Assembly: GCF_000737315.1 (NCBI RefSeq)
Contig: NZ_JMCB01000037.1
Coordinates: 1-9,257, forward strand
Length of the DNA: 9,257 nucleotides
From: Hyalangium minutum
GTDB taxonomy: Bacteria; Myxococcota; Myxococcia; Myxococcales; Myxococcaceae
Direction: 5' to 3'
Under the pieces are notes generated by a model that worked only from the letters and a program-made list of their open reading frames with translations, was not told the DNA's origin and did not search any database. This document shows, one piece after another, positions 1-5,680 of this stretch (position 1 is its first letter; the number at the start of each line of letters is the position of its first letter). Position numbers and translations under genes: made by a program.

Positions 1-16
1 GTAAGAGTTCACCGGC

Positions 17-1459
17 TCAAGCAGCCAGAGCAGCCGGAGCGGTCTCGAAGCTCGGGAGTAGCGAGGGAGGCTGGAGGCCGTGGCGGTGCGCCGCCAAGGC
101 TTGCGTCAGGTAATCCAGCACGGAGCGTTCCTGCAGTTTGAGCGTCGTGACGGTCGTGAGGACCCTTTCAACGAAGCGACTGCCCTCGGGGCTGCGGGTA
201 CCGAAGGAGGTTTTGCGGTACATGACGCCTGGACGGATGCAGCGCTCGGCGAAGTTGTTGGTCGGCTCCAACTCGGGCACGTCGACGAACGTCCACAGGC
301 ACTTCTCCAGCTTGAGGATTTCCTCTGCCATGCCTGCCGTCCTCTGCTCGGCGCACACCACCGCCTCACGCAGCAGGCGCCCCACGGCCCGCTCCACCTT
401 GCGCATCCGCCGCTGGAATACCTCTCTGGACAGAGTGCCGTCACGCACGCGGCGCCACCAGCGGAACATCTTGTCCCTCTGGGACATGAGCTGCTCGCCC
501 AGGCGCGCCCCTTCGCCGCCCCGGTCGATGAACCCTTGAAAGTCACGCGTCAAGTGTGCCCAGCACACTTGGCGCAGCCCCGCGTCATACCAGTTGTAGG
601 CACTCCACCTGTCCGTCACCAGCCAGCCCAGGAAGTCCTCACCCAGCAGCGCTTTGATGACTTCGCTGCCCCGGCTGGTGCTGATGCGGAACACCGCCAC
701 CAGCGTGGTGGCCACTACCCACAGCCACGCGCGTGCGCTCCGTCCCCTCTCCACGCCCTGGGCCCACCCAGTCTCATCGGCATGCACCCCGTCGGCTTGG
801 CGCACAAAGGCCTCGGCTTCGGTGACAGGCCCGGCCAGCGCCGCGCTCATCTCCCGCTCCAGGTTGATGACGCTGCCTACCGACAACTCCACCCCCACCA
901 AGTCCGACAGCGCGTCGCGCACCAGGCGCTTGGACAGCCGGTATTTGCCTACCAGCACGCTGGCCACCGCGGCCAGCCGCTCCCCAAAGGCGCTCGTCAC
1001 CTCCGGCGGCAGGGGGGCCCGCGTGGCACTGCCGCACCCCGCGCACTCCAACTGGTGGCAGCGGTACTCCGTCACCACCGCCGCTACTGGCGGCAGTTCC
1101 ACAACCTGGTGGCGCTCAGGCGTGGTGTCTTTCCCGCTTAGCCTCCTCTGGCAGCGCTGGCATCTGCTAGGCACCAAATCCACGAAGTGCTGCACCTGCT
1201 CGGGTGGCACCAAGGCCCGCTCGTGCTTCTTGTGGCCGGGCTGTCCACCGGGGCGTCGGCCTCTGCTGGGCTTCTGCAGGGGACGCACTGTGCCGGGCGG
1301 ATCACTCGAGGGAGGCTTCGAGCTGTTGGTCGAGTTCTGCTCCAAGCGCGAGCGCAACTGCGCATTCTCCTCCTCCAACTGCCTTATCCGCTCCAACGCT
1401 GCCGCCAGCAGCGCCTGAAGCTGAAGTACCTGGGCTTCTAATGACTCGGAGGAACTCAC
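17..1459 (-). CDS. tnpC: IS66-family DDE transposase (TnpC-like, 480 aa), apparently intact
   Basis: N-terminal coiled coil, NSSKPPSSD and GGQPGH motifs, zinc finger CQRC...CAGC, catalytic-region motifs VHADETGW, LVTDRWSAY, QVCWAHLTRDF, PTNNFAERCIR and SFGTRSPEG. GTG start; stop abuts the terminal IR. Confidence 0.95.
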   Translation of the reverse strand: MSSSESLEAQVLQLQALLAAALERIRQLEEENAQLRSRLEQNSTNSSKPPSSDPPGTVRPLQKPSRGRRPGGQPGHKKHERALVPPEQVQHFVDLVPSRCQRCQRRLSGKDTTPERHQVVELPPVAAVVTEYRCHQLECAGCGSATRAPLPPEVTSAFGERLAAVASVLVGKYRLSKRLVRDALSDLVGVELSVGSVINLEREMSAALAGPVTEAEAFVRQADGVHADETGWAQGVERGRSARAWLWVVATTLVAVFRISTSRGSEVIKALLGEDFLGWLVTDRWSAYNWYDAGLRQVCWAHLTRDFQGFIDRGGEGARLGEQLMSQRDKMFRWWRRVRDGTLSREVFQRRMRKVERAVGRLLREAVVCAEQRTAGMAEEILKLEKCLWTFVDVPELEPTNNFAERCIRPGVMYRKTSFGTRSPEGSRFVERVLTTVTTLKLQERSVLDYLTQALAAHRHGLQPPSLLPSFETAPAALAA

Positions 1460-1537
1460 TCAGCAGGTAGAACACGGCACGGCCTACCTGCTCAATAGGG
1501 TTCTACTCCGGCTGCTCTCTCCCCAACCAAGTCCCTC

Positions 1538-1552
1538 CCGGTGAACGGTTAC
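1538..1552 (-). repeat. IS66 left terminal inverted repeat (partner at 1-15)
   Basis: CCGGTGAACGGTTAC is the reverse complement of 1-15 with 2 mismatches. Confidence 0.9.
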
Positions 1553-1560: not shown

Positions 1561-1635
1561 ATGCCCCGGAAAACGACTCCCATACGACGGATCTAAAGCA
1601 TGATGTGGGGCATCCCGGCTCAGATGCGGCCAATG
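1561..1635. repeat. Continuation of the degenerate 84-bp repeat interrupted by IS66
   Basis: 9141-9158 joined to 1561-1626 forms one 84-nt unit. It aligns without gaps to 8973-9056 (about 47/72 over the best part) and 9057-9140 (about 47/84), by hand count. Confidence 0.65.
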
Positions 1636-1911
1636 TTCCCCCAAGCGGAGGAGGCGAGAGCGGGGAGTGAGGCAGCGGCCAGGAAGGAGCGGATGAAGCA
1701 GAGGACGCCGCGAGTGGATTGGGCAGAGTTGCTGAAGAGGACGTTCGACTTCGACGTGTTCGCCTGCGTCAGGTGTGGAGGCAGGCGGCGGGTCTTGGCG
1801 TATGTGAAGGCAGGCAGGGGAGTGCGAGCGATACGGGAGCACCTGGGCTTGCCCACGGCAGGTGTGAGCCTGGCCCCGGCGCAAGAATCAATCCAGGCCG
1901 CGGGGTGTTAA
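1636..1911 (+). pseudogene. 3' fragment of an IS91-like (Y2/HUH rolling-circle) transposase of myxobacterial type
   Basis: RTPRVDWAELLKRTFDFDVFACVRCGGRRRVLAYV...VRAIREHLGLP matches the C-terminal W..LL.R.F..DV..C..CGG...I..HLGLP signature of IS91/ISCR-like transposases. The catalytic N-terminal part is absent; the left boundary is approximate. Confidence 0.8.
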
Positions 1912-2115
1912 GGCTCACCCCTCCCCAGAGCCAAAAGGCCCAGTCCCCTACCGCGCCCCCCATGGGAGGGCGGCCTGGGCAGGCGTGTACCTCAAGGGGC
2001 TGCGCGGCCTGTCCACCGACCGGGCGCACTGCTCGGGCGGCACCTGTCAGCGGTCCTCCTCGGCACCTCCGCTCCAGTCCTCACCCGCAACATGGCCTCT
2101 ATCCTGCCTATACGC
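1912..2115 (+). mobile_element. IS91/ISCR-like 3' end with oriIS-like terminus (...TCCTGCCTATACGC)
   Basis: About 200 bp of GC-rich, hairpin-containing non-coding DNA downstream of the transposase stop, ending in CCTATAC. The position and terminal motif resemble ISCR/IS91 oriIS ends (recalled, not searched). Confidence 0.65.
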
Positions 2116-2221
2116 GCGGCTGATTCCGTAGCGCTGCCCATGGGCCGGGGCACGATTTCTCGCTCTGTGCGACATGATCACCGACACTCTCCGGCCGCTA
2201 CAAGGCAAAGGACGGTCGGCC

Positions 2222-4717
2222 ATGGGGACCACTTTCGTCAACCACCACATCTACCAAGAGGGAGACGCCTACGGGCTCGTGTACGCGCTGCTGCTGAGCC
2301 GGGCCAAGCTGGGCGATCCGATGAGGGGGCTCCTGTGGGTGGACGAGGGGCTGTACGACGACGGAATCGACCCCTTGCTCAAGAAGGCCGTCGACTACAA
2401 GCGGAAGGTCGATGGGCGGCTGGGCTACTTCTCGTCATTCGGCCTGCTCGACAGCGAACTCTGCATCGTCCGCTGCCGCTTCGAGAAGGACGTCGATCTC
2501 GTGGAGTTCCATGAGGAGCCAGGCTCCCTCCTGGTGATCGCGGACAAGGACTTCTTCAACAGCAACCCCCGCCTCCTGTCGCGCTTCCTCACCACGAAGG
2601 AGAACCCCATCGGCGGCTGGCTCGAGGAGAAGGAAGCGGCGCTGGCCCTCAAAGTGGATGAGCGCTCGCTCGAGCATGCGGCGGCGGTTCTCGGCATCTC
2701 ACTGTCGGGCAGGGTGTCGTGGTCGAACGCCGAGCGGTTGCGTGGCTTCCTCCGCGTACACTCCTTCTACAAGGAGGCGGCTCTTGACGTCATGGAGGTG
2801 GGGCTCGTCGCCCGCCGCCGTCAGGAGTTCTCGGATGCCGTCATGAAGGCGTTCCACGGTGGCAAGGGGCAGATCGCCTTCGCTTACATCGATGCCTCGA
2901 CGAACTACGTCCTGAGCTGCGTGGACAAGAAAGGCTTCGCGCCAGTGGTGAGCGCGCTCCGGCTGGAGATCCTCAACGCCACCAGCAAGTTTTCCCAGGC
3001 GAACGAAAAGTTCATCTCGACCTTCGTCGAGGATCTGGAGTTGCGCAAGGGCGGAGTCCGAGAGGCCACGCCCGTCCTGGTGCTGTTCTGGATCCGCGGC
3101 GCGAAGCCCGACGAGGAGCGCGCCATCCTCGCGGACTTCGGCCTCGGGCAGGAGAGAACGAGCCCCGGCAAGCCGCAGCACCATACCAACTTCACGCTCT
3201 ACAAGCAGGTCAGGCAGATCGTCTCCGACATGGCGGCCGAGCTGAACGCGCCGATCCGGTTCATCCCCATCGGCGACGAGCTCAAGGAAGAGCTCGGGAA
3301 GCTGTCGGCCCCGATCTCCTCGAGAGCGATGGCGAGGGGCGAGGACCTCTCCATGGGCCAGAACGCGCTCGAGCACACGGCGATGGTCCTCGGCATCTCG
3401 CTCTACGAGAACCTCTCGTCGGAGGATCGGACGCGGATCCAGAGCTACCTCCTGCACCACTACGGAATCTCTGAGAAGAAGAGCGACGAGATGTTGACGC
3501 TCTCGTACCGCAAGAGCCCATCGTCCCATAACTTGATCCGGTTCTGGGAGCGCGAGCCCTTCAAGGGCCAGCCGATGGGGGCTCAGATCAACTTCCTGCT
3601 CAACCTCTCCCTCCGCTATCCGGTGATCCAGATCGGCATGCGCAGCGGCTCGATGGAGCGCCTGATGTACCTCGGCGTGCCGACGATCTACTTCGACCGC
3701 ACGCAGTCGGAAGACGACCTCCAGAACCCGGTAGGGGCGACGCGGATCAAGCAGCTCTGTGGGTTCCAGGGCCGCTCGCTGCAAGAGCTCATGGCCTACC
3801 TGATCCGGCTCAATGCGTCGCTGGATGGCGGGGGCCGCGGAACCACCAAGGGGTTCCCGCTGTTCTTCCAGATCGAGAACCGGGACACCGGCTTCCTCCG
3901 GTACTCCGCGCTCCAGAACACCACCGTCAGCCGCACCATCGAGCGGATCGCCGGGAGCGAGACCCTGAGCGAGTACAACAGTTTCAAGCAGGCGCTGCTG
4001 CAGAAGAAGTACCTCACGTCGAAGCTCTCCGAGTTGGCACGGTCACTCCTTCATCTCGGCGGACTCGTCGACGAGGAGGAGCAGAAGATGCGCGCCTTGG
4101 TCTGGTTCATCGTGTTCGCCTACCCACGGTATGCGAGCCGCTTCCCCAACACGGGCATCACCGCGAAGCTCAAGCTCTTTGGGAAGATCGGCGACACCCA
4201 GAAGTTCTTCCAGCAGTCCAGTCACAAGGAGAAGTCGCTGGAGCAGCTCAAGCAAGCGTTCCGCGCGGACAAGAAGGTCTCCAAGACCGCTCCCGAGTCC
4301 AAAGTGGGAGATACAATTCGCGTCTCGGATCCGTCGACCTACCAGGGCTTCGAGATCGTCGGCGAGGTCACCGAGCTGACCGAGACGCACATCAAGCTGA
4401 AGGCGAAGGCGTGCTATCAGACCGGCACGATGATCCTCGAAACCACAACGCAGACGAAGAAGCTGGTGGGAACGACGATCGACTGGCCGCGCGCGGTCCA
4501 GTTCAAGAAGGGGGACCGGATCCGCATGGCCAACGCGCTCTTCCACCCCGGCGTCGATGTGGTCGGCGAAGTGATCGATGTGGACACCAGCTTCGTCACG
4601 CTGTCCATCGACAAGTGCTACAAGGCCAGCACCACGACGAACGACGTGACCGGGGCGAAGCTCATCGGAAAGAAGGTGAAGTGGCGGCGGGACCGGGTGG
4701 TGCGCAAGGAGGGCTGA
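2222..4717 (+). CDS. Large hypothetical protein (831 aa from ATG 2222; ORF open from 2174): GT-B/GT9-like glycosyltransferase fold plus two C-terminal SH3/Sm-like repeats
   Basis: Long uninterrupted ORF with strong GC3 bias and AAGGA upstream of ATG 2222. N-terminal IYQEGDAYGLVYALL resembles the GT9 GD motif. VLFWIRG...PQHHTN...IRFIPIGD...IGMRSGSMERLMYLGVPTIYF resembles GT9 IG.DSG.MHLA.A.GVPT.ALF. Coding status is certain; function is inferred. Confidence 0.9.
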   Translation: MGTTFVNHHIYQEGDAYGLVYALLLSRAKLGDPMRGLLWVDEGLYDDGIDPLLKKAVDYKRKVDGRLGYFSSFGLLDSELCIVRCRFEKDVDLVEFHEEPGSLLVIADKDFFNSNPRLLSRFLTTKENPIGGWLEEKEAALALKVDERSLEHAAAVLGISLSGRVSWSNAERLRGFLRVHSFYKEAALDVMEVGLVARRRQEFSDAVMKAFHGGKGQIAFAYIDASTNYVLSCVDKKGFAPVVSALRLEILNATSKFSQANEKFISTFVEDLELRKGGVREATPVLVLFWIRGAKPDEERAILADFGLGQERTSPGKPQHHTNFTLYKQVRQIVSDMAAELNAPIRFIPIGDELKEELGKLSAPISSRAMARGEDLSMGQNALEHTAMVLGISLYENLSSEDRTRIQSYLLHHYGISEKKSDEMLTLSYRKSPSSHNLIRFWEREPFKGQPMGAQINFLLNLSLRYPVIQIGMRSGSMERLMYLGVPTIYFDRTQSEDDLQNPVGATRIKQLCGFQGRSLQELMAYLIRLNASLDGGGRGTTKGFPLFFQIENRDTGFLRYSALQNTTVSRTIERIAGSETLSEYNSFKQALLQKKYLTSKLSELARSLLHLGGLVDEEEQKMRALVWFIVFAYPRYASRFPNTGITAKLKLFGKIGDTQKFFQQSSHKEKSLEQLKQAFRADKKVSKTAPESKVGDTIRVSDPSTYQGFEIVGEVTELTETHIKLKAKACYQTGTMILETTTQTKKLVGTTIDWPRAVQFKKGDRIRMANALFHPGVDVVGEVIDVDTSFVTLSIDKCYKASTTTNDVTGAKLIGKKVKWRRDRVVRKEG

Positions 4718-4726
4718 TCGTGTCGC

Positions 4727-4788
4727 TCCTCCTCGGCACCTCCGCTCCAGCCCTCACCAGCAACATGGCCTCTATCCTGCCTATACGC
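4727..4788 (+). repeat. Second oriIS-like end: 62-bp direct repeat of 2054-2115
   Basis: 60/62 identical (mismatches at 2078/4751 and 2086/4759). Starts 10 bp after the stop of the large ORF. Confidence 0.92.
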
Positions 4789-5219
4789 CGGCTGCGCACG
4801 TTGAGGCCCAGGTTGGCCAGCAGCCGGGTGCCGCTCTCGAAGGCGTAGTCCGCCGCGAGCCGCGGCTGCACGCCAAACCCCTTCTGGCCCTGAAGCTCCG
4901 AGGCGTCCGCCGTGGGCATCACCATTGGCGCCGCGAGCCCCAGCCGCAGGGTGTCGCGTTCTAGAAGTAACACCTTGGGGACGAGCCGGAGGTCACCCAG
5001 GCCGCCCTTCCACGACTGCTCCAGGTTGCCGGTGGGCAGCTCGTTGAACTCGCCGCGCTCGATCTTGAGCGGGGCCACGAGGCCCAGCTCGAAGCGCTCC
5101 CCCAGGCCGGTGGAGCCGATCAGGTCGAAGCCGAGCTGGTTGCGCACCAGGTGCTGCAGCCGGTCGGCGTTGGCCGGGTTGATGACGACGAGCGGCTCAT
5201 GGGCGTAGTTGAAGAAGAG
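4789..5219 (-). pseudogene. Internal fragment of a myxobacterial OmpA-family outer-membrane beta-barrel gene
   Basis: LFFNYAHEPLVV...GLGDLRLVPKVLLLE...GVQPRLAADYAF...LLANLGLNVR is typical of the N-terminal barrel of myxobacterial OmpA-family proteins. There is no signal peptide or OmpA C-terminal domain, and the frame runs straight into the oriIS repeat. Confidence 0.7.
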
Positions 5220-5583
5220 TGGAGACGATCTTCCGGAAGCGCGGCGTTTCGATCGCGGGGTGCGCGATCCTTGGTGCATAGGGGTGATCAGGCAAGCGCG
5301 GGTCGGATCAGCATCGCTGTCGATGGCTCTTCCTGGTCCCTTGCTCGACCTCCGGACGCCCGATGGGTGTACGTGGCACCAACTTCCGCTCTGCCGCTGG
5401 GCTCTTGAACAAGAGAGTACCTCATTCCCTGCTGCGGGCGGCAAGCCGCACTCGTCATGACCATCGGCGGAAGTGACGGCGATCGTTGGAGCGCGGGACT
5501 CGTGCCCGCGCTTCGTCGCGATCGACGGGATCGAAATCCCTCGTTATTGGAAGATCGTTTCCAATGAAGGGCTTGTGCGCCGG

Positions 5584-5680
5584 CCCGGAGTGCGGCTCAT
5601 GGGCTCCCCGTCAGCGTCCCTCACCTCCCGCTCTGCTCCCGCCCGCTACGCCCAAGAGGGCTCCGGTCCTTCCTATGCTC
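5584..5680 (+). mobile_element. Diverged third oriIS-like end (...TCCTTCCTATGC)
   Basis: 5610-5680 aligns to 2046-2115 at roughly 46/70 by hand, sharing GTCAGCG, GCTCC and TCCT.CCTAT.C. It abuts a 5'-truncated gene. Confidence 0.6.

What the first reader, a model, noticed from the sequence alone, without database searches (positions are those of the whole stretch)
2054..4788. Intact large gene packaged between two oriIS-like direct repeats: possible rolling-circle (HUH) gene cassette
Seen: a 62-bp sequence (60/62 identical) ends 106 bp before ATG 2222 and recurs 10 bp after the stop, so 2116-4788 is exactly leader + gene + one ori end. The first copy is the 3' end of an IS91-like transposase remnant; the second has no transposase. 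Both are followed by a similar sequence (GCGGCTG / CGGCTG). Known: IS91/ISCR transposases nick at oriIS downstream of tnp and copy back toward terIS, capturing DNA on that side without target duplication. Inference: the gene lies on the inside of the second ori, so this could be a non-autonomous cassette in which cargo has replaced the transposase. Such modules might stack ori-to-ori like an integron-like array driven by a HUH enzyme.
Basis: partly seen in the sequence, partly recalled or inferred. Interest (0 to 1): 0.8.

Follow-up and report, generated by a model that had tools for sequence, protein, structure and literature searches.

The report
Gene bracketed by IS91-family end fragments
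An intact 831-residue gene of unknown function sits between two same-direction copies of the right end of a rolling-circle (IS91-family) insertion sequence common in myxobacteria, most likely because a 62-base end stub carried the gene along by one-ended transposition, a known behaviour of this family and not a new cassette system.

Summary
The repeat is real: 2054-2115 and 4727-4788 match 60/62, or 68/72 once the flanks and one gap are included. It is the transposase-distal end (...CCTATACGC|) of a ~1.8-kb IS91-family element found in 62 loci of Myxococcaceae/Archangiaceae. Copy 1 (1625-2115) is a 0.5-kb truncated copy. Copy 2 is a 62-nt stub.

Such end-anchored fragments, 6 to about 740 nt long, are common. 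Neighbouring ends are co-oriented in 23 of 26 cases. Eight junctions show a fragment starting directly after a preceding end. One MAG carries a full-length copy followed by six truncated copies within about 29 kb.

The gene is not at home. Its closest ortholog (91% DNA identity) lies beside a HEAT-repeat gene and has no repeats nearby. The shared DNA ends at the last sense codon.

Best reading (about 0.5): the unit 2116-4788 is a one-ended, read-through transposition product that was pasted next to an existing end and depends on a transposase supplied in trans.

The integron-like idea is not supported. Only 2 of 15 spacers hold a complete ORF ending at the next fragment. No gene homolog elsewhere carries the repeat. 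The two genomic copies belong to one 7.6-kb duplication. Short repeats at the junctions (CGGCTG, GGCTGAT) remain unexplained. The finding is a new member of a known kind and of moderate interest.

The parts
1..1552 (-). IS66-family insertion sequence. The transposase ORF is 17-1459 on the minus strand. The 8-bp target duplication AGTTCAAC lies at 1553-1560 and 9151-9158. It is context only and is not part of the repeat-gene-repeat unit.
   Evidence: Pfam DDE_Tnp_IS66 2.4e-37. Terminal inverted repeats GTAAGAGTTCACCGG / CCGGTGAACGGTTAC and the duplication were read. Bases 1-99 equal 9159-9257.
1625..2115 (+). 5'-truncated copy of an IS91-family element, positions about -493 to 0 counted from the right end. 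It holds only the C-terminal tail of the transposase gene and the ~200-nt untranslated right end.
   Evidence: 94% identical to the full-length copy in L036. Alignment A3. Tail homologs P0019-P0138. No catalytic domain.
2054..2115 (+). Repeat copy 1 (ori1): the last 62 nt of the element, ending ...CCTATACGC.
   Evidence: In 68 related copies the flanks diverge immediately after CGC.
2116..2221 (+). Leader of the gene. Bases 2143-2221 are clearly homologous to the ortholog's upstream region, and 2116-2142 only weakly. It contains GCGGCTG (2116-2122) and GGCTGAT (2118-2124).
2222..4717 (+). Intact 831-aa gene ('G') of a small family restricted to myxobacteria. Function is unknown. The model suggests a GT-B-like body with two C-terminal Tudor/SH3-like barrels.
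   Evidence: 18 homologs in total. No Pfam, NCBIfam, PADLOC or PDB-sequence hit. AF2 model with pLDDT 78.5. Only weak Foldseek hits, E >= 7.5e-3.
4712..4726 (+). Junction stretch GGCTGATCGTGTCGC between the end of homology with the ortholog (4711) and the stub. It supplies the last codon GGC and the stop TGA, repeats GGCTGAT of 2118-2124, and ends in CGC.
   Evidence: A shared 7-mer between two 22-nt windows has p ~0.02.
4727..4788 (+). Repeat copy 2 (ori2): a 62-nt stub of the same element's right end (65 nt if 4724-4726 are counted). No transposase sequence is attached.
4789..5215 (-). Fragment of an outer-membrane beta-barrel gene (Phenol_MetA_deg family), cut by the stub at profile position ~148 of 242. 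It forms the right flank and starts with CGGCTG.
   Evidence: Pfam 4.7e-05 and 1.6e-06. The left flank of the other genomic copy does not continue this gene.

Best explanation
The structure is a by-product of rolling-circle transposition by an IS91-family insertion sequence that is abundant in Myxococcaceae/Archangiaceae. It is not a dedicated cassette system.

Copy 1 (1625-2115) is a 5'-truncated copy. Copy 2 (4727-4788) is a 62-nt stub of the same right end. The 2,673-nt unit 2116-4788 (leader, gene and stub) looks like a one-ended, read-through product. In this model a transposase supplied in trans nicks at the stub's ...CCTATACGC| end. Strand displacement then runs back through the stub and, because the stub has no proper terminator, on through the neighbouring gene. 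It stops about 106 nt upstream of the ATG.

The unit was then pasted immediately 3' of the CGC that ends a resident copy. This family prefers to insert after [CA]GC, so an existing end is an ideal target. That preference would explain the head-to-tail, co-oriented stacking seen in the survey.

Shown: the identity of the repeat; the truncation series; the left-flank [CA]GC preference; the head-to-tail junctions and arrays; and the non-native position of the gene, with boundaries that coincide with the two ends.

Inferred: that the gene moved as one unit with the stub, the order of events, and that the right end is the functional origin.
For: (1) All 68 unique flanks at related right ends begin to diverge immediately after CCTATAC-GC, and the ends lie in different flanks in 62 loci, all from Myxococcaceae/Archangiaceae.
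(2) Full-length ~1.8-kb copies encode a Zn_Tnp_IS91 + Y2_Tnp transposase. The repeat lies downstream of its 3' end, the side where IS91 and ISCR elements carry oriIS (PMC13181058, PMC9376610).
(3) Fragments anchored on the right end range from 6 to ~740 nt, and there is a recurrent precise internal boundary at about -478 (|TCCCCCAAGC) found in different flanks and genera. IS801 behaves the same way, producing 229-, 360- and 679-nt right-end fragments in 26% of events and also carrying up to 1.4 kb of upstream DNA (PMC3189936).
(4) Left flanks of the -478 units end in GC in 10 of 12 cases and in [CA]GC in 9 of 12, p ~1e-8. The element's own end is ...ACGC.
(5) Eight junctions show an end-anchored piece starting directly after a preceding CCTATACGC.
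(6) 23 of 26 neighbouring ends within 10 kb are co-oriented. MAG CAVSWU010000003.1 has one full-length copy plus six truncated copies on one strand within about 29 kb.
(7) In that array a 2.7-kb unit (spacer plus copy) is 90% identical to another spacer plus copy, and its homology starts exactly at the preceding end.
(8) The closest ortholog of the gene (86% aa, 90.9% DNA without gaps) lies after a HEAT-repeat gene with no IS fragment nearby. Homology spans window ~2143-4711 and stops at the last sense codon. No ortholog of that neighbour turned up from this genome in the protein collection.
Against: (1) The gene-stub link is seen only in this genome, and both copies lie in one 7.6-kb duplication. 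No donor configuration (gene plus stub in its native context) was found.
(2) The flanks outside the composite are not two halves of one gene, so at least one further rearrangement is needed.
(3) The repeat runs 6 nt past the element's end (CGGCTG after both copies, p ~0.003), and GGCTGAT brackets the segment shared with the ortholog (p ~0.02). A clean transposase cut does not predict either.
(4) The last 62-125 nt of the right end contain no significant hairpin, whereas IS91 and IS801 have subterminal palindromes at oriIS.
(5) The conserved flank nucleotides lie on the left side, not next to the presumed origin as in IS91. The assignment of origin and terminator, and of the transferred strand, is therefore by analogy only.
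(6) No full-length transposase from this genome was seen. All of the 120 best-scoring homologs of the tail (of 221 found) are 61-179 aa. The genome scan did not return the window's own genome.
(7) The survey was seeded with a right-end pattern, so the excess of right-end fragments is partly ascertainment.
Confidence: 0.5

Rival explanations
1. Reorganisation rather than transposition. A 0.5-kb fragment and a 62-nt stub arrived independently, or are leftovers of larger copies. Homologous or illegitimate recombination and deletions between dispersed IS fragments then shuffled the gene into its present place. The two ends bracket it by accident of history.
For: Bardaji et al. concluded that most IS801 fragments in finished P. 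syringae genomes come from reorganisations, not from one-ended transposition (PMC3189936). The region is a patchwork of gene fragments, an IS66 element and a small inverted-repeat element. The outer flanks are not contiguous parts of one gene. End fragments are frequent enough in these genomes to provide recombination substrates.
Against: Both boundaries of the foreign segment coincide with element ends to within 0-15 nt, and the ORF is intact. Head-to-tail junctions exactly at CCTATACGC recur in eight other places. The stub's left flank ends in CGC, as at bona fide insertions.
Confidence: 0.25
2. Template switching during repair or replication at a transposase nick. Synthesis leaving the resident end and its flank (…CGC CGGCTG) jumped by microhomology to the gene's locus, copied it, and returned to the resident element 62-65 nt before its end. 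This duplicated the end together with 6 nt of flank.
For: The duplicated stretch includes 6 nt beyond the element's terminus, giving 68/72 with one gap. GGCTG occurs at all three junctions: 2118, 4712 and 4790. Chance estimates are 0.003 and 0.02. There is a 1-nt indel at the first junction.
Against: It needs two or three switches. No independent example was found in the survey. The 2116-2142 stretch aligns weakly with the ortholog's own upstream region, so GCGGCTG may simply be native sequence.
Confidence: 0.12
3. The gene segment 2125-4711 is itself a mobile insertion that makes a 7-bp target duplication (GGCTGAT). It landed in a 17-nt spacer between two nearly tandem ends that were already there.
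For: An exact 7-bp direct repeat brackets exactly the segment shared with the ortholog. Homologs sit in unrelated contexts in every genome examined. Near-tandem end pairs with short spacers of 36 and 142 nt exist elsewhere.
Against: There are no terminal inverted repeats. The protein looks like a GT-B-type enzyme with Tudor-like barrels, not a transposase. The ortholog locus has only an imperfect, offset GC-rich repeat. An element whose stop codon lies outside it is unusual.
Confidence: 0.07
4. A dedicated integron-like system: gene cassettes, each carrying one origin, stacked origin-to-origin and shuffled by a HUH enzyme.
For: Co-oriented arrays of ends with 0.9-8.2-kb spacers exist. A HUH enzyme could in principle start at one end and terminate at the next.
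Against: Only 2 of 15 spacers are single complete ORFs ending at the next fragment. The others are cut genes, several genes or genes on either strand. Upstream of 19 other truncated fragments (24-266 nt), no complete ORF was found ending at the fragment. No cassette is seen in two independent contexts. The fragments vary in length rather than forming a fixed recombination site.
Confidence: 0.03

Closest known systems
One-ended transposition of IS91-family elements (IS91, IS801, IS1294/IS1294b), including the miniature right-end fragments of IS801
   Same: The transposase has the Zn-finger and Y2/HUH domains and the two ends are functionally different. The survey, which was seeded on the right end, shows a series of fragments keeping that end and lacking variable amounts of the left side. 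There are recurrent internal left boundaries, no target duplication, and DNA on the left side can be carried along (PMC3189936, PMC13181058).
   Different: Here the presumed driver next to the cargo is only a 62-nt stub with no transposase. The conserved flank nucleotides ([CA]GC) lie on the left side, whereas IS91 has a tetranucleotide next to oriIS. No subterminal palindrome is found at the right end. Units are often found directly after an existing right end. Nothing was tested experimentally.
ISCR elements and their resistance-gene arrays
   Same: The parent transposase scores best against NCBIfam 'ISCR element clade Ia' (3.7e-79). Genes sit next to element ends, and truncated copies accompany captured DNA. 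The boundaries are inferred from sequence (PMC9376610).
   Different: The score is far below the curated cut-off (267 vs 925 bits). The host is a myxobacterium and the cargo is an uncharacterised gene. There is no integron or resistance context. ISCR mobility by rolling circle is itself unproven (PMC9376610).
Helitron gene capture and tandem arrays (eukaryotic rolling-circle transposons)
   Same: Both involve a HUH/Y2 enzyme, terminator bypass that transduces flanking DNA, and non-autonomous copies far outnumbering autonomous ones (PMC4778049 for the mechanism; the remainder is from my own knowledge).
   Different: The protein family (RepHel) and the ends differ, and the hosts are eukaryotes. 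The resemblance is in logic only, and no membership is claimed.
Integron gene cassettes
   Same: Both show ordered, co-oriented modules, each ending in a recombination-type site.
   Different: There is no integrase or attI. The 'site' varies in length from 6 to 740 nt. The modules are not single promoterless ORFs.

Membership tests
IS91 family insertion sequence (parent element of the repeat) | Transposase with an N-terminal zinc-binding domain and a HUH/Y2 catalytic domain | tested here: met
   The full-length copy in L036 has Pfam Zn_Tnp_IS91 5.3e-17 and Y2_Tnp 2.3e-28, both above gathering cut-offs. NCBIfam IS91 1.5e-28 and ISCR clade Ia 3.7e-79 are both below their curated cut-offs. In the window itself only the non-catalytic C-terminal tail remains.
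IS91 family insertion sequence (parent element of the repeat) | Two different ends, no terminal inverted repeats, and a left (terIS) end with a GC-rich stem-loop | tested here: met
   In four of the full-length or left-end copies the left end carries the hairpin GGAGGCGGCGGG-AATCGAA-CCCGCCGCCTCC or a close variant (perfect in L019). The right end is ...CCTATACGC and is unrelated to it.
IS91 family insertion sequence (parent element of the repeat) | oriIS end with subterminal palindrome(s) | tested here: not met
   Folding the last 62-125 nt on either strand gives energies no better than shuffles, z = +0.7 to +1.3.
IS91 family insertion sequence (parent element of the repeat) | No target-site duplication, and a conserved target tetranucleotide adjacent to oriIS | tested here: inconclusive
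   No duplication flanks the -478 units. The right flank shows no consensus across 68 unique flanks. The last conserved bases, (A)CGC, could themselves be the target remnant. The left flank ends in [CA]GC in 9 of 12 cases.
IS91 family insertion sequence (parent element of the repeat) | One-ended transposition products: fragments keeping the origin end, and transduction of DNA beyond the terminator | tested here: met
   Truncation series and recurrent boundary. This is sequence evidence only and is biased by the right-end search pattern.
Non-autonomous unit mobilised in trans (cargo plus origin stub) | The same unit with identical ends at two or more independent loci, or a detected circle junction | tested here: not met
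   Both genomic copies lie inside one 7.6-kb duplication that is 100% identical from 1958 on. The protein collection holds no other close relative with the repeat. The metagenome scan with the junction 24-mer found only an unrelated gene. Circles cannot be tested with these tools.
Non-autonomous unit mobilised in trans (cargo plus origin stub) | A cognate full-length transposase in the same genome | not testable with these tools
   The window's genome was not returned by the genome scan. All of the 120 best-scoring homologs of the tail (of 221 found) are 61-179 aa.
Integron-like cassette array | Each module is one complete gene ending next to a recombination site of fixed form | tested here: not met
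   This holds for 2 of 15 spacers. Fragment lengths range from 6 to ~740 nt.
Integron-like cassette array | A dedicated recombinase and primary attachment site at the head of the array | tested here: inconclusive
   In the MAG array a full-length IS91-family copy lies at the upstream end, but its reading frame is interrupted near the C-terminus. In the window there is no transposase at all.

The most novel reading that the evidence does not exclude
In this myxobacterial IS91 lineage the element's own right end is the preferred landing site for end-anchored units of any length. Co-oriented arrays would then grow next to a resident copy, and any gene that acquires a short stub could be copied into such an array by a transposase acting in trans. 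That would be a rolling-circle route to gene shuffling that works without a transposase in the moved unit.
Probability: 0.15. Interest if true: 0.6.

Novelty: new member of a known kind. Interest (0 to 1): 0.35.

Why it matters
If the gene really travelled with a 62-nt stub, very short IS91-family end fragments would be enough to move whole genes in trans. Bardaji et al. raised this possibility for IS801 (PMC3189936) but did not demonstrate it. That would extend the known gene-capture ability of IS91/ISCR elements, which matters for the spread of resistance and virulence genes, to large myxobacterial genomes. The survey also gives a first description of an uncharacterised IS91-family element in Myxococcaceae/Archangiaceae: its ends, an internal secondary boundary, a flank preference, and co-oriented arrays. 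For the window itself the practical message is modest. It is an ordinary mobile-element scar around an accessory gene of unknown function.

Tried and rejected
- I first read the 0.5-kb remnant as a MITE with a fixed left end at ~1625. That was wrong: longer copies continue upstream in frame with the transposase. A real recurrent boundary does exist at about -478.
- I tested whether 2116-2142 is a piece of the element's left end, because of a resemblance to GGTAGCGTGTGCCCTGG. That stretch lies ~130 nt inside the element, not at its terminus. The window stretch aligns about as well with the ortholog's own upstream region. I dropped the idea.
- I tested whether the composite is a simple insertion into the outer-membrane gene. 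The left flank of the other copy does not continue that gene.
- I looked for the native site in this genome through the ortholog's HEAT-repeat neighbour. No ortholog of that neighbour turned up from this genome.
- I looked for conserved synteny of the gene family. There is none.
- I searched metagenome contigs for the gene-end/stub junction. The single hit, L072, is an unrelated membrane-protein gene.
- Promoter and terminator scans of 1900-4900 found nothing above background.
- ARAGORN calls no tRNA at the tRNA-like left hairpin.
- The gene has no hit in Pfam, NCBIfam, PADLOC or PDB sequences. Foldseek gave only weak matches.
- The Toleman ISCR review (PMC1489542) is not held, so I could not check the published oriIS consensus.
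Full report
**1. The observation**

The window is the whole 9,257-nt contig JMCB01000037.1 of assembly GCA_000737315.1; from memory this is Hyalangium minutum DSM 14724. The repeat finder gives 2051-2115 vs 4724-4788 at 62/65. With one gap, BLAST extends the similarity to 2122/4794, 68/72. So the 'GCGGCTG / CGGCTG' remark is correct. The repeat therefore runs 6 nt past what turns out to be the element's terminus.

The ORF 2222-4717 is intact at 831 aa. Copy 1 ends 106 nt before its ATG. Copy 2 begins 10 nt after its stop.

**2. What the repeat is**

The 103-aa ORF upstream of copy 1 has 221 homologs. All of the 120 best-scoring ones are short (61-179 aa), and several are mis-named 'HrpA'. The longer ones carry the end of Pfam Y2_Tnp.

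A scan of one genome per species with CATGGCNTCTATCCNGCCTATAC returned 62 loci, all from Myxococcaceae/Archangiaceae. In 68 unique flanks the sequence is conserved up to ...CCTATAC-GC and diverges immediately afterwards. This defines a mobile-element terminus at window positions 2115 and 4788.

Two loci hold essentially full-length copies of ~1.75-1.8 kb (L036, L057). Their transposase has Zn_Tnp_IS91 and Y2_Tnp domains and the HFH motif. It also scores against NCBIfam ISCR clade Ia and IS91, below the curated cut-offs. The left end carries a 12-bp-stem hairpin.

The repeat lies downstream of the transposase gene's 3' end, the side on which IS91 and ISCR elements carry oriIS (PMC13181058, PMC9376610). 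The window's copy 1 corresponds to about -493 to 0 counted from that end. Copy 2 corresponds to -62 (or -65) to 0.

**3. How this element behaves elsewhere**

Mapping all fragments in the 62 loci shows the following.
- Right-end-anchored pieces occur at many lengths: 24, 34, 61-77, 87-92, 120-220, 270-445 and up to ~740 nt.
- Internal-deletion derivatives also occur.
- A precise boundary recurs at about -478 (|TCCCCCAAGC) in unrelated flanks and in several genera.
- The left flanks of those -478 units end in GC in 10 of 12 cases and in [CA]GC in 9 of 12, p ~1e-8.
- Right flanks have no consensus.
- Neighbouring right ends within 10 kb are co-oriented in 23 of 26 cases, p = 4e-5.

Five contiguous 8-kb blocks of MAG CAVSWU010000003.1 hold one full-length copy followed by six truncated copies on the same strand. 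Five of these are exactly 478 nt and three are 100% identical to each other. The spacers are 2.2-8.2 kb.

Eight junctions show an end-anchored piece starting directly after a preceding CCTATACGC. The pieces range from 6, 7 and 11 nt up to more than 300 nt. In the MAG array, one spacer-plus-copy unit (28370-31081) is 90% identical to another (17161-19684). Its homology begins exactly at the preceding end.

This is the pattern described experimentally for IS801. Right-end fragments of 229, 360 and 679 nt arise by one-ended transposition in 26% of events, and read-through carries 0.3-1.4 kb of upstream DNA (PMC3189936). For IS91 and IS1294, termination fails in 1-14% of events, and the bottom-strand ssDNA circle is the functional intermediate (PMC13181058).

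**4. The gene and its boundaries**

The gene has only 18 homologs in the protein collection. Every one that carries a source name is from a myxobacterium. The closest (P0002, 86% aa) lies on two Logan contigs, downstream of a 451-aa gene and a 651-aa HEAT-repeat gene. It has no IS fragment nearby.

DNA identity is 90.9% without gaps over window 2143-4711. On the right, homology stops at the last shared sense codon. The ortholog then reads TAG. The window reads GGC TGA TCGTGTCGC and then the stub. On the left, clear homology starts ~27 nt after copy 1, and a weaker alignment reaches its end.

No ortholog of the HEAT-repeat neighbour turned up from this genome in the collection. More distant homologs sit in unrelated contexts without IS fragments. 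The gene is therefore not at an ancestral position, and the foreign segment is bounded on both sides by the element's ends.

The protein has no Pfam, NCBIfam, PADLOC or PDB-sequence match. An AlphaFold model (pLDDT 78.5) gives only weak Foldseek hits: GT-B enzymes for the body, and tandem Tudor/Agenet/MBT barrels that presumably match the two C-terminal beta-barrel domains (about residues 695-831). All have E >= 7.5e-3. Its function remains unknown.

**5. Best explanation and its weak points**

The unit 2116-4788 has the anatomy of a read-through product. It would start at the stub's end and be pasted 3' of the CGC that ends a resident truncated copy. This matches the flank preference and the head-to-tail junctions seen elsewhere. 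The stub's own left flank also ends in CGC.

Several things speak against a clean story.
- The gene-stub link is unique to this genome. Its two copies (contigs 35 and 37) are parts of one 7.6-kb duplication that differs only inside the IS remnant.
- The outer flanks are not halves of one gene.
- CGGCTG follows both ends (p ~0.003), and GGCTGAT brackets the segment shared with the ortholog (p ~0.02). This points to microhomology or to another process.
- The right end has no hairpin.
- The flank rule lies on the opposite side from IS91's target tetranucleotide, so origin and terminator are assigned by analogy only.
- The survey was seeded on the right end, which biases it.

I put the one-ended-transposition reading at about 0.5. 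The rivals are recombinational reshuffling (0.25), template switching at a nick (0.12), the gene segment being a duplication-making insertion of its own (0.07) and a dedicated integron-like system (0.03).

**6.

The 'oriIS-like end' and 'non-autonomous module' parts hold up as plausible. The 'integron-like array of cassettes' part does not.
- Of 15 spacers between co-oriented ends, only the window and L057 have a complete ORF ending within 15 nt of the next fragment.
- Upstream of 19 other truncated fragments (24-266 nt), no complete ORF was found ending at the fragment; the few ORFs present are on the other strand or run into the fragment.
- The fragments are not of a fixed form.
- No unit is seen in two independent contexts.

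**7. Novelty and verdict**

This is a new member of a known kind: IS91-family one-ended transposition and gene capture, here in an unnamed myxobacterial element with an uncharacterised cargo. Two features go beyond what the papers I read describe. One is end-targeted, co-oriented stacking. The other is a cargo apparently driven by a 62-nt stub. Both are inferred from sequence only. Interest 0.35.

Noticed in passing
window 1-99 and 9159-9257; 1553-1560 and 9151-9158: The contig starts and ends with the same 99 nt, the start of the IS66-family element. The 8-bp duplication AGTTCAAC flanks the IS across the contig ends. The contig is therefore a cycle: either a tandem repeat of [7.6-kb segment + IS66 + 64 nt] or a 9,158-bp circle. 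Contig JMCB01000035.1 enters the same segment from unique DNA and also ends in the IS66 start.
   Followed up: partly
window 1786-1789, 1919, 1957 vs L001 9565-9568, 9698, 9736: All differences between the two genomic copies of the 7.6-kb segment lie inside the IS91 remnant, and none lies in the other 7.3 kb. This suggests gene conversion from other IS copies, or consensus noise in a repeat.
   Followed up: no
L036 ~2355-2385 (minus strand), L057, L019, L033, L043 and about 20 other loci: On the other strand the left-end hairpin of the full-length element reads like the 3' end of a tRNA (T-arm plus acceptor), but ARAGORN calls no tRNA. The same ~80-nt piece occurs alone in many loci. In several it lies 36-190 nt downstream of a right end, after a conserved stretch with repeated TTTGGTCC motifs. 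In five of those loci the right end also cuts a gene beginning MSKTWIGKW. A similar overlap of a putative terIS with an integrase att site is reported for CR2/GIsul2 (PMC9376610).
   Followed up: partly
L010, L011, L013, L014, L017, L026, L027, L063, L067 (right flanks of the element): In different genomes the right end is fused to nested positions of one and the same ~100-nt sequence. This looks like end-adjacent deletions or repeated hits in one target.
   Followed up: no
L036 about -480 from the right end; also L057: Both near-full-length transposase genes change reading frame in their C-terminal part. In L036 the change lies at the run TTCTGG TCCCCCAAGC, the same spot as the recurrent -478 boundary of the miniature copies.
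   Followed up: no
window 4713-4759 vs L072 861-901: The junction stretch plus the first part of the stub is 41/47 identical, with a 24-nt exact run, to a membrane-protein gene in an unrelated metagenome contig, reading LIVSLLLGTPALS (possibly ccmB, my guess). This is probably chance in GC-rich codons, but the element's untranslated end reads AVLLGTSAPALT in that frame.
   Followed up: partly
window 5220-5563: A 344-nt stretch is bounded by 48-nt imperfect inverted repeats (73%). It sits at the other break of the outer-membrane gene fragment, and GCGGCTCATGGGC occurs on both sides (5198-5210, 5592-5604). It may be a small MITE.
   Followed up: no
window 8647-8682: An exact 18-nt tandem duplication (CTACAATGCGTCAGCAAT x2) lies inside ORF 8378-8917 and adds six residues. 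The G+C content drops to ~51% from 8,900 to 9,158.
   Followed up: no
window 2644-2703 vs 3343-3402: There is an internal 60-nt repeat (72%) within the gene, encoding two copies of a ...LEH(A/T)A(A/M)VLGISL... helix. This suggests an internal domain duplication in the protein.
   Followed up: no
window 7880-7901 and 8063-8084: A 22-nt inverted repeat (91% complementary) with arms 161 nt apart overlaps the start of the DUF2379 ORF.
   Followed up: no
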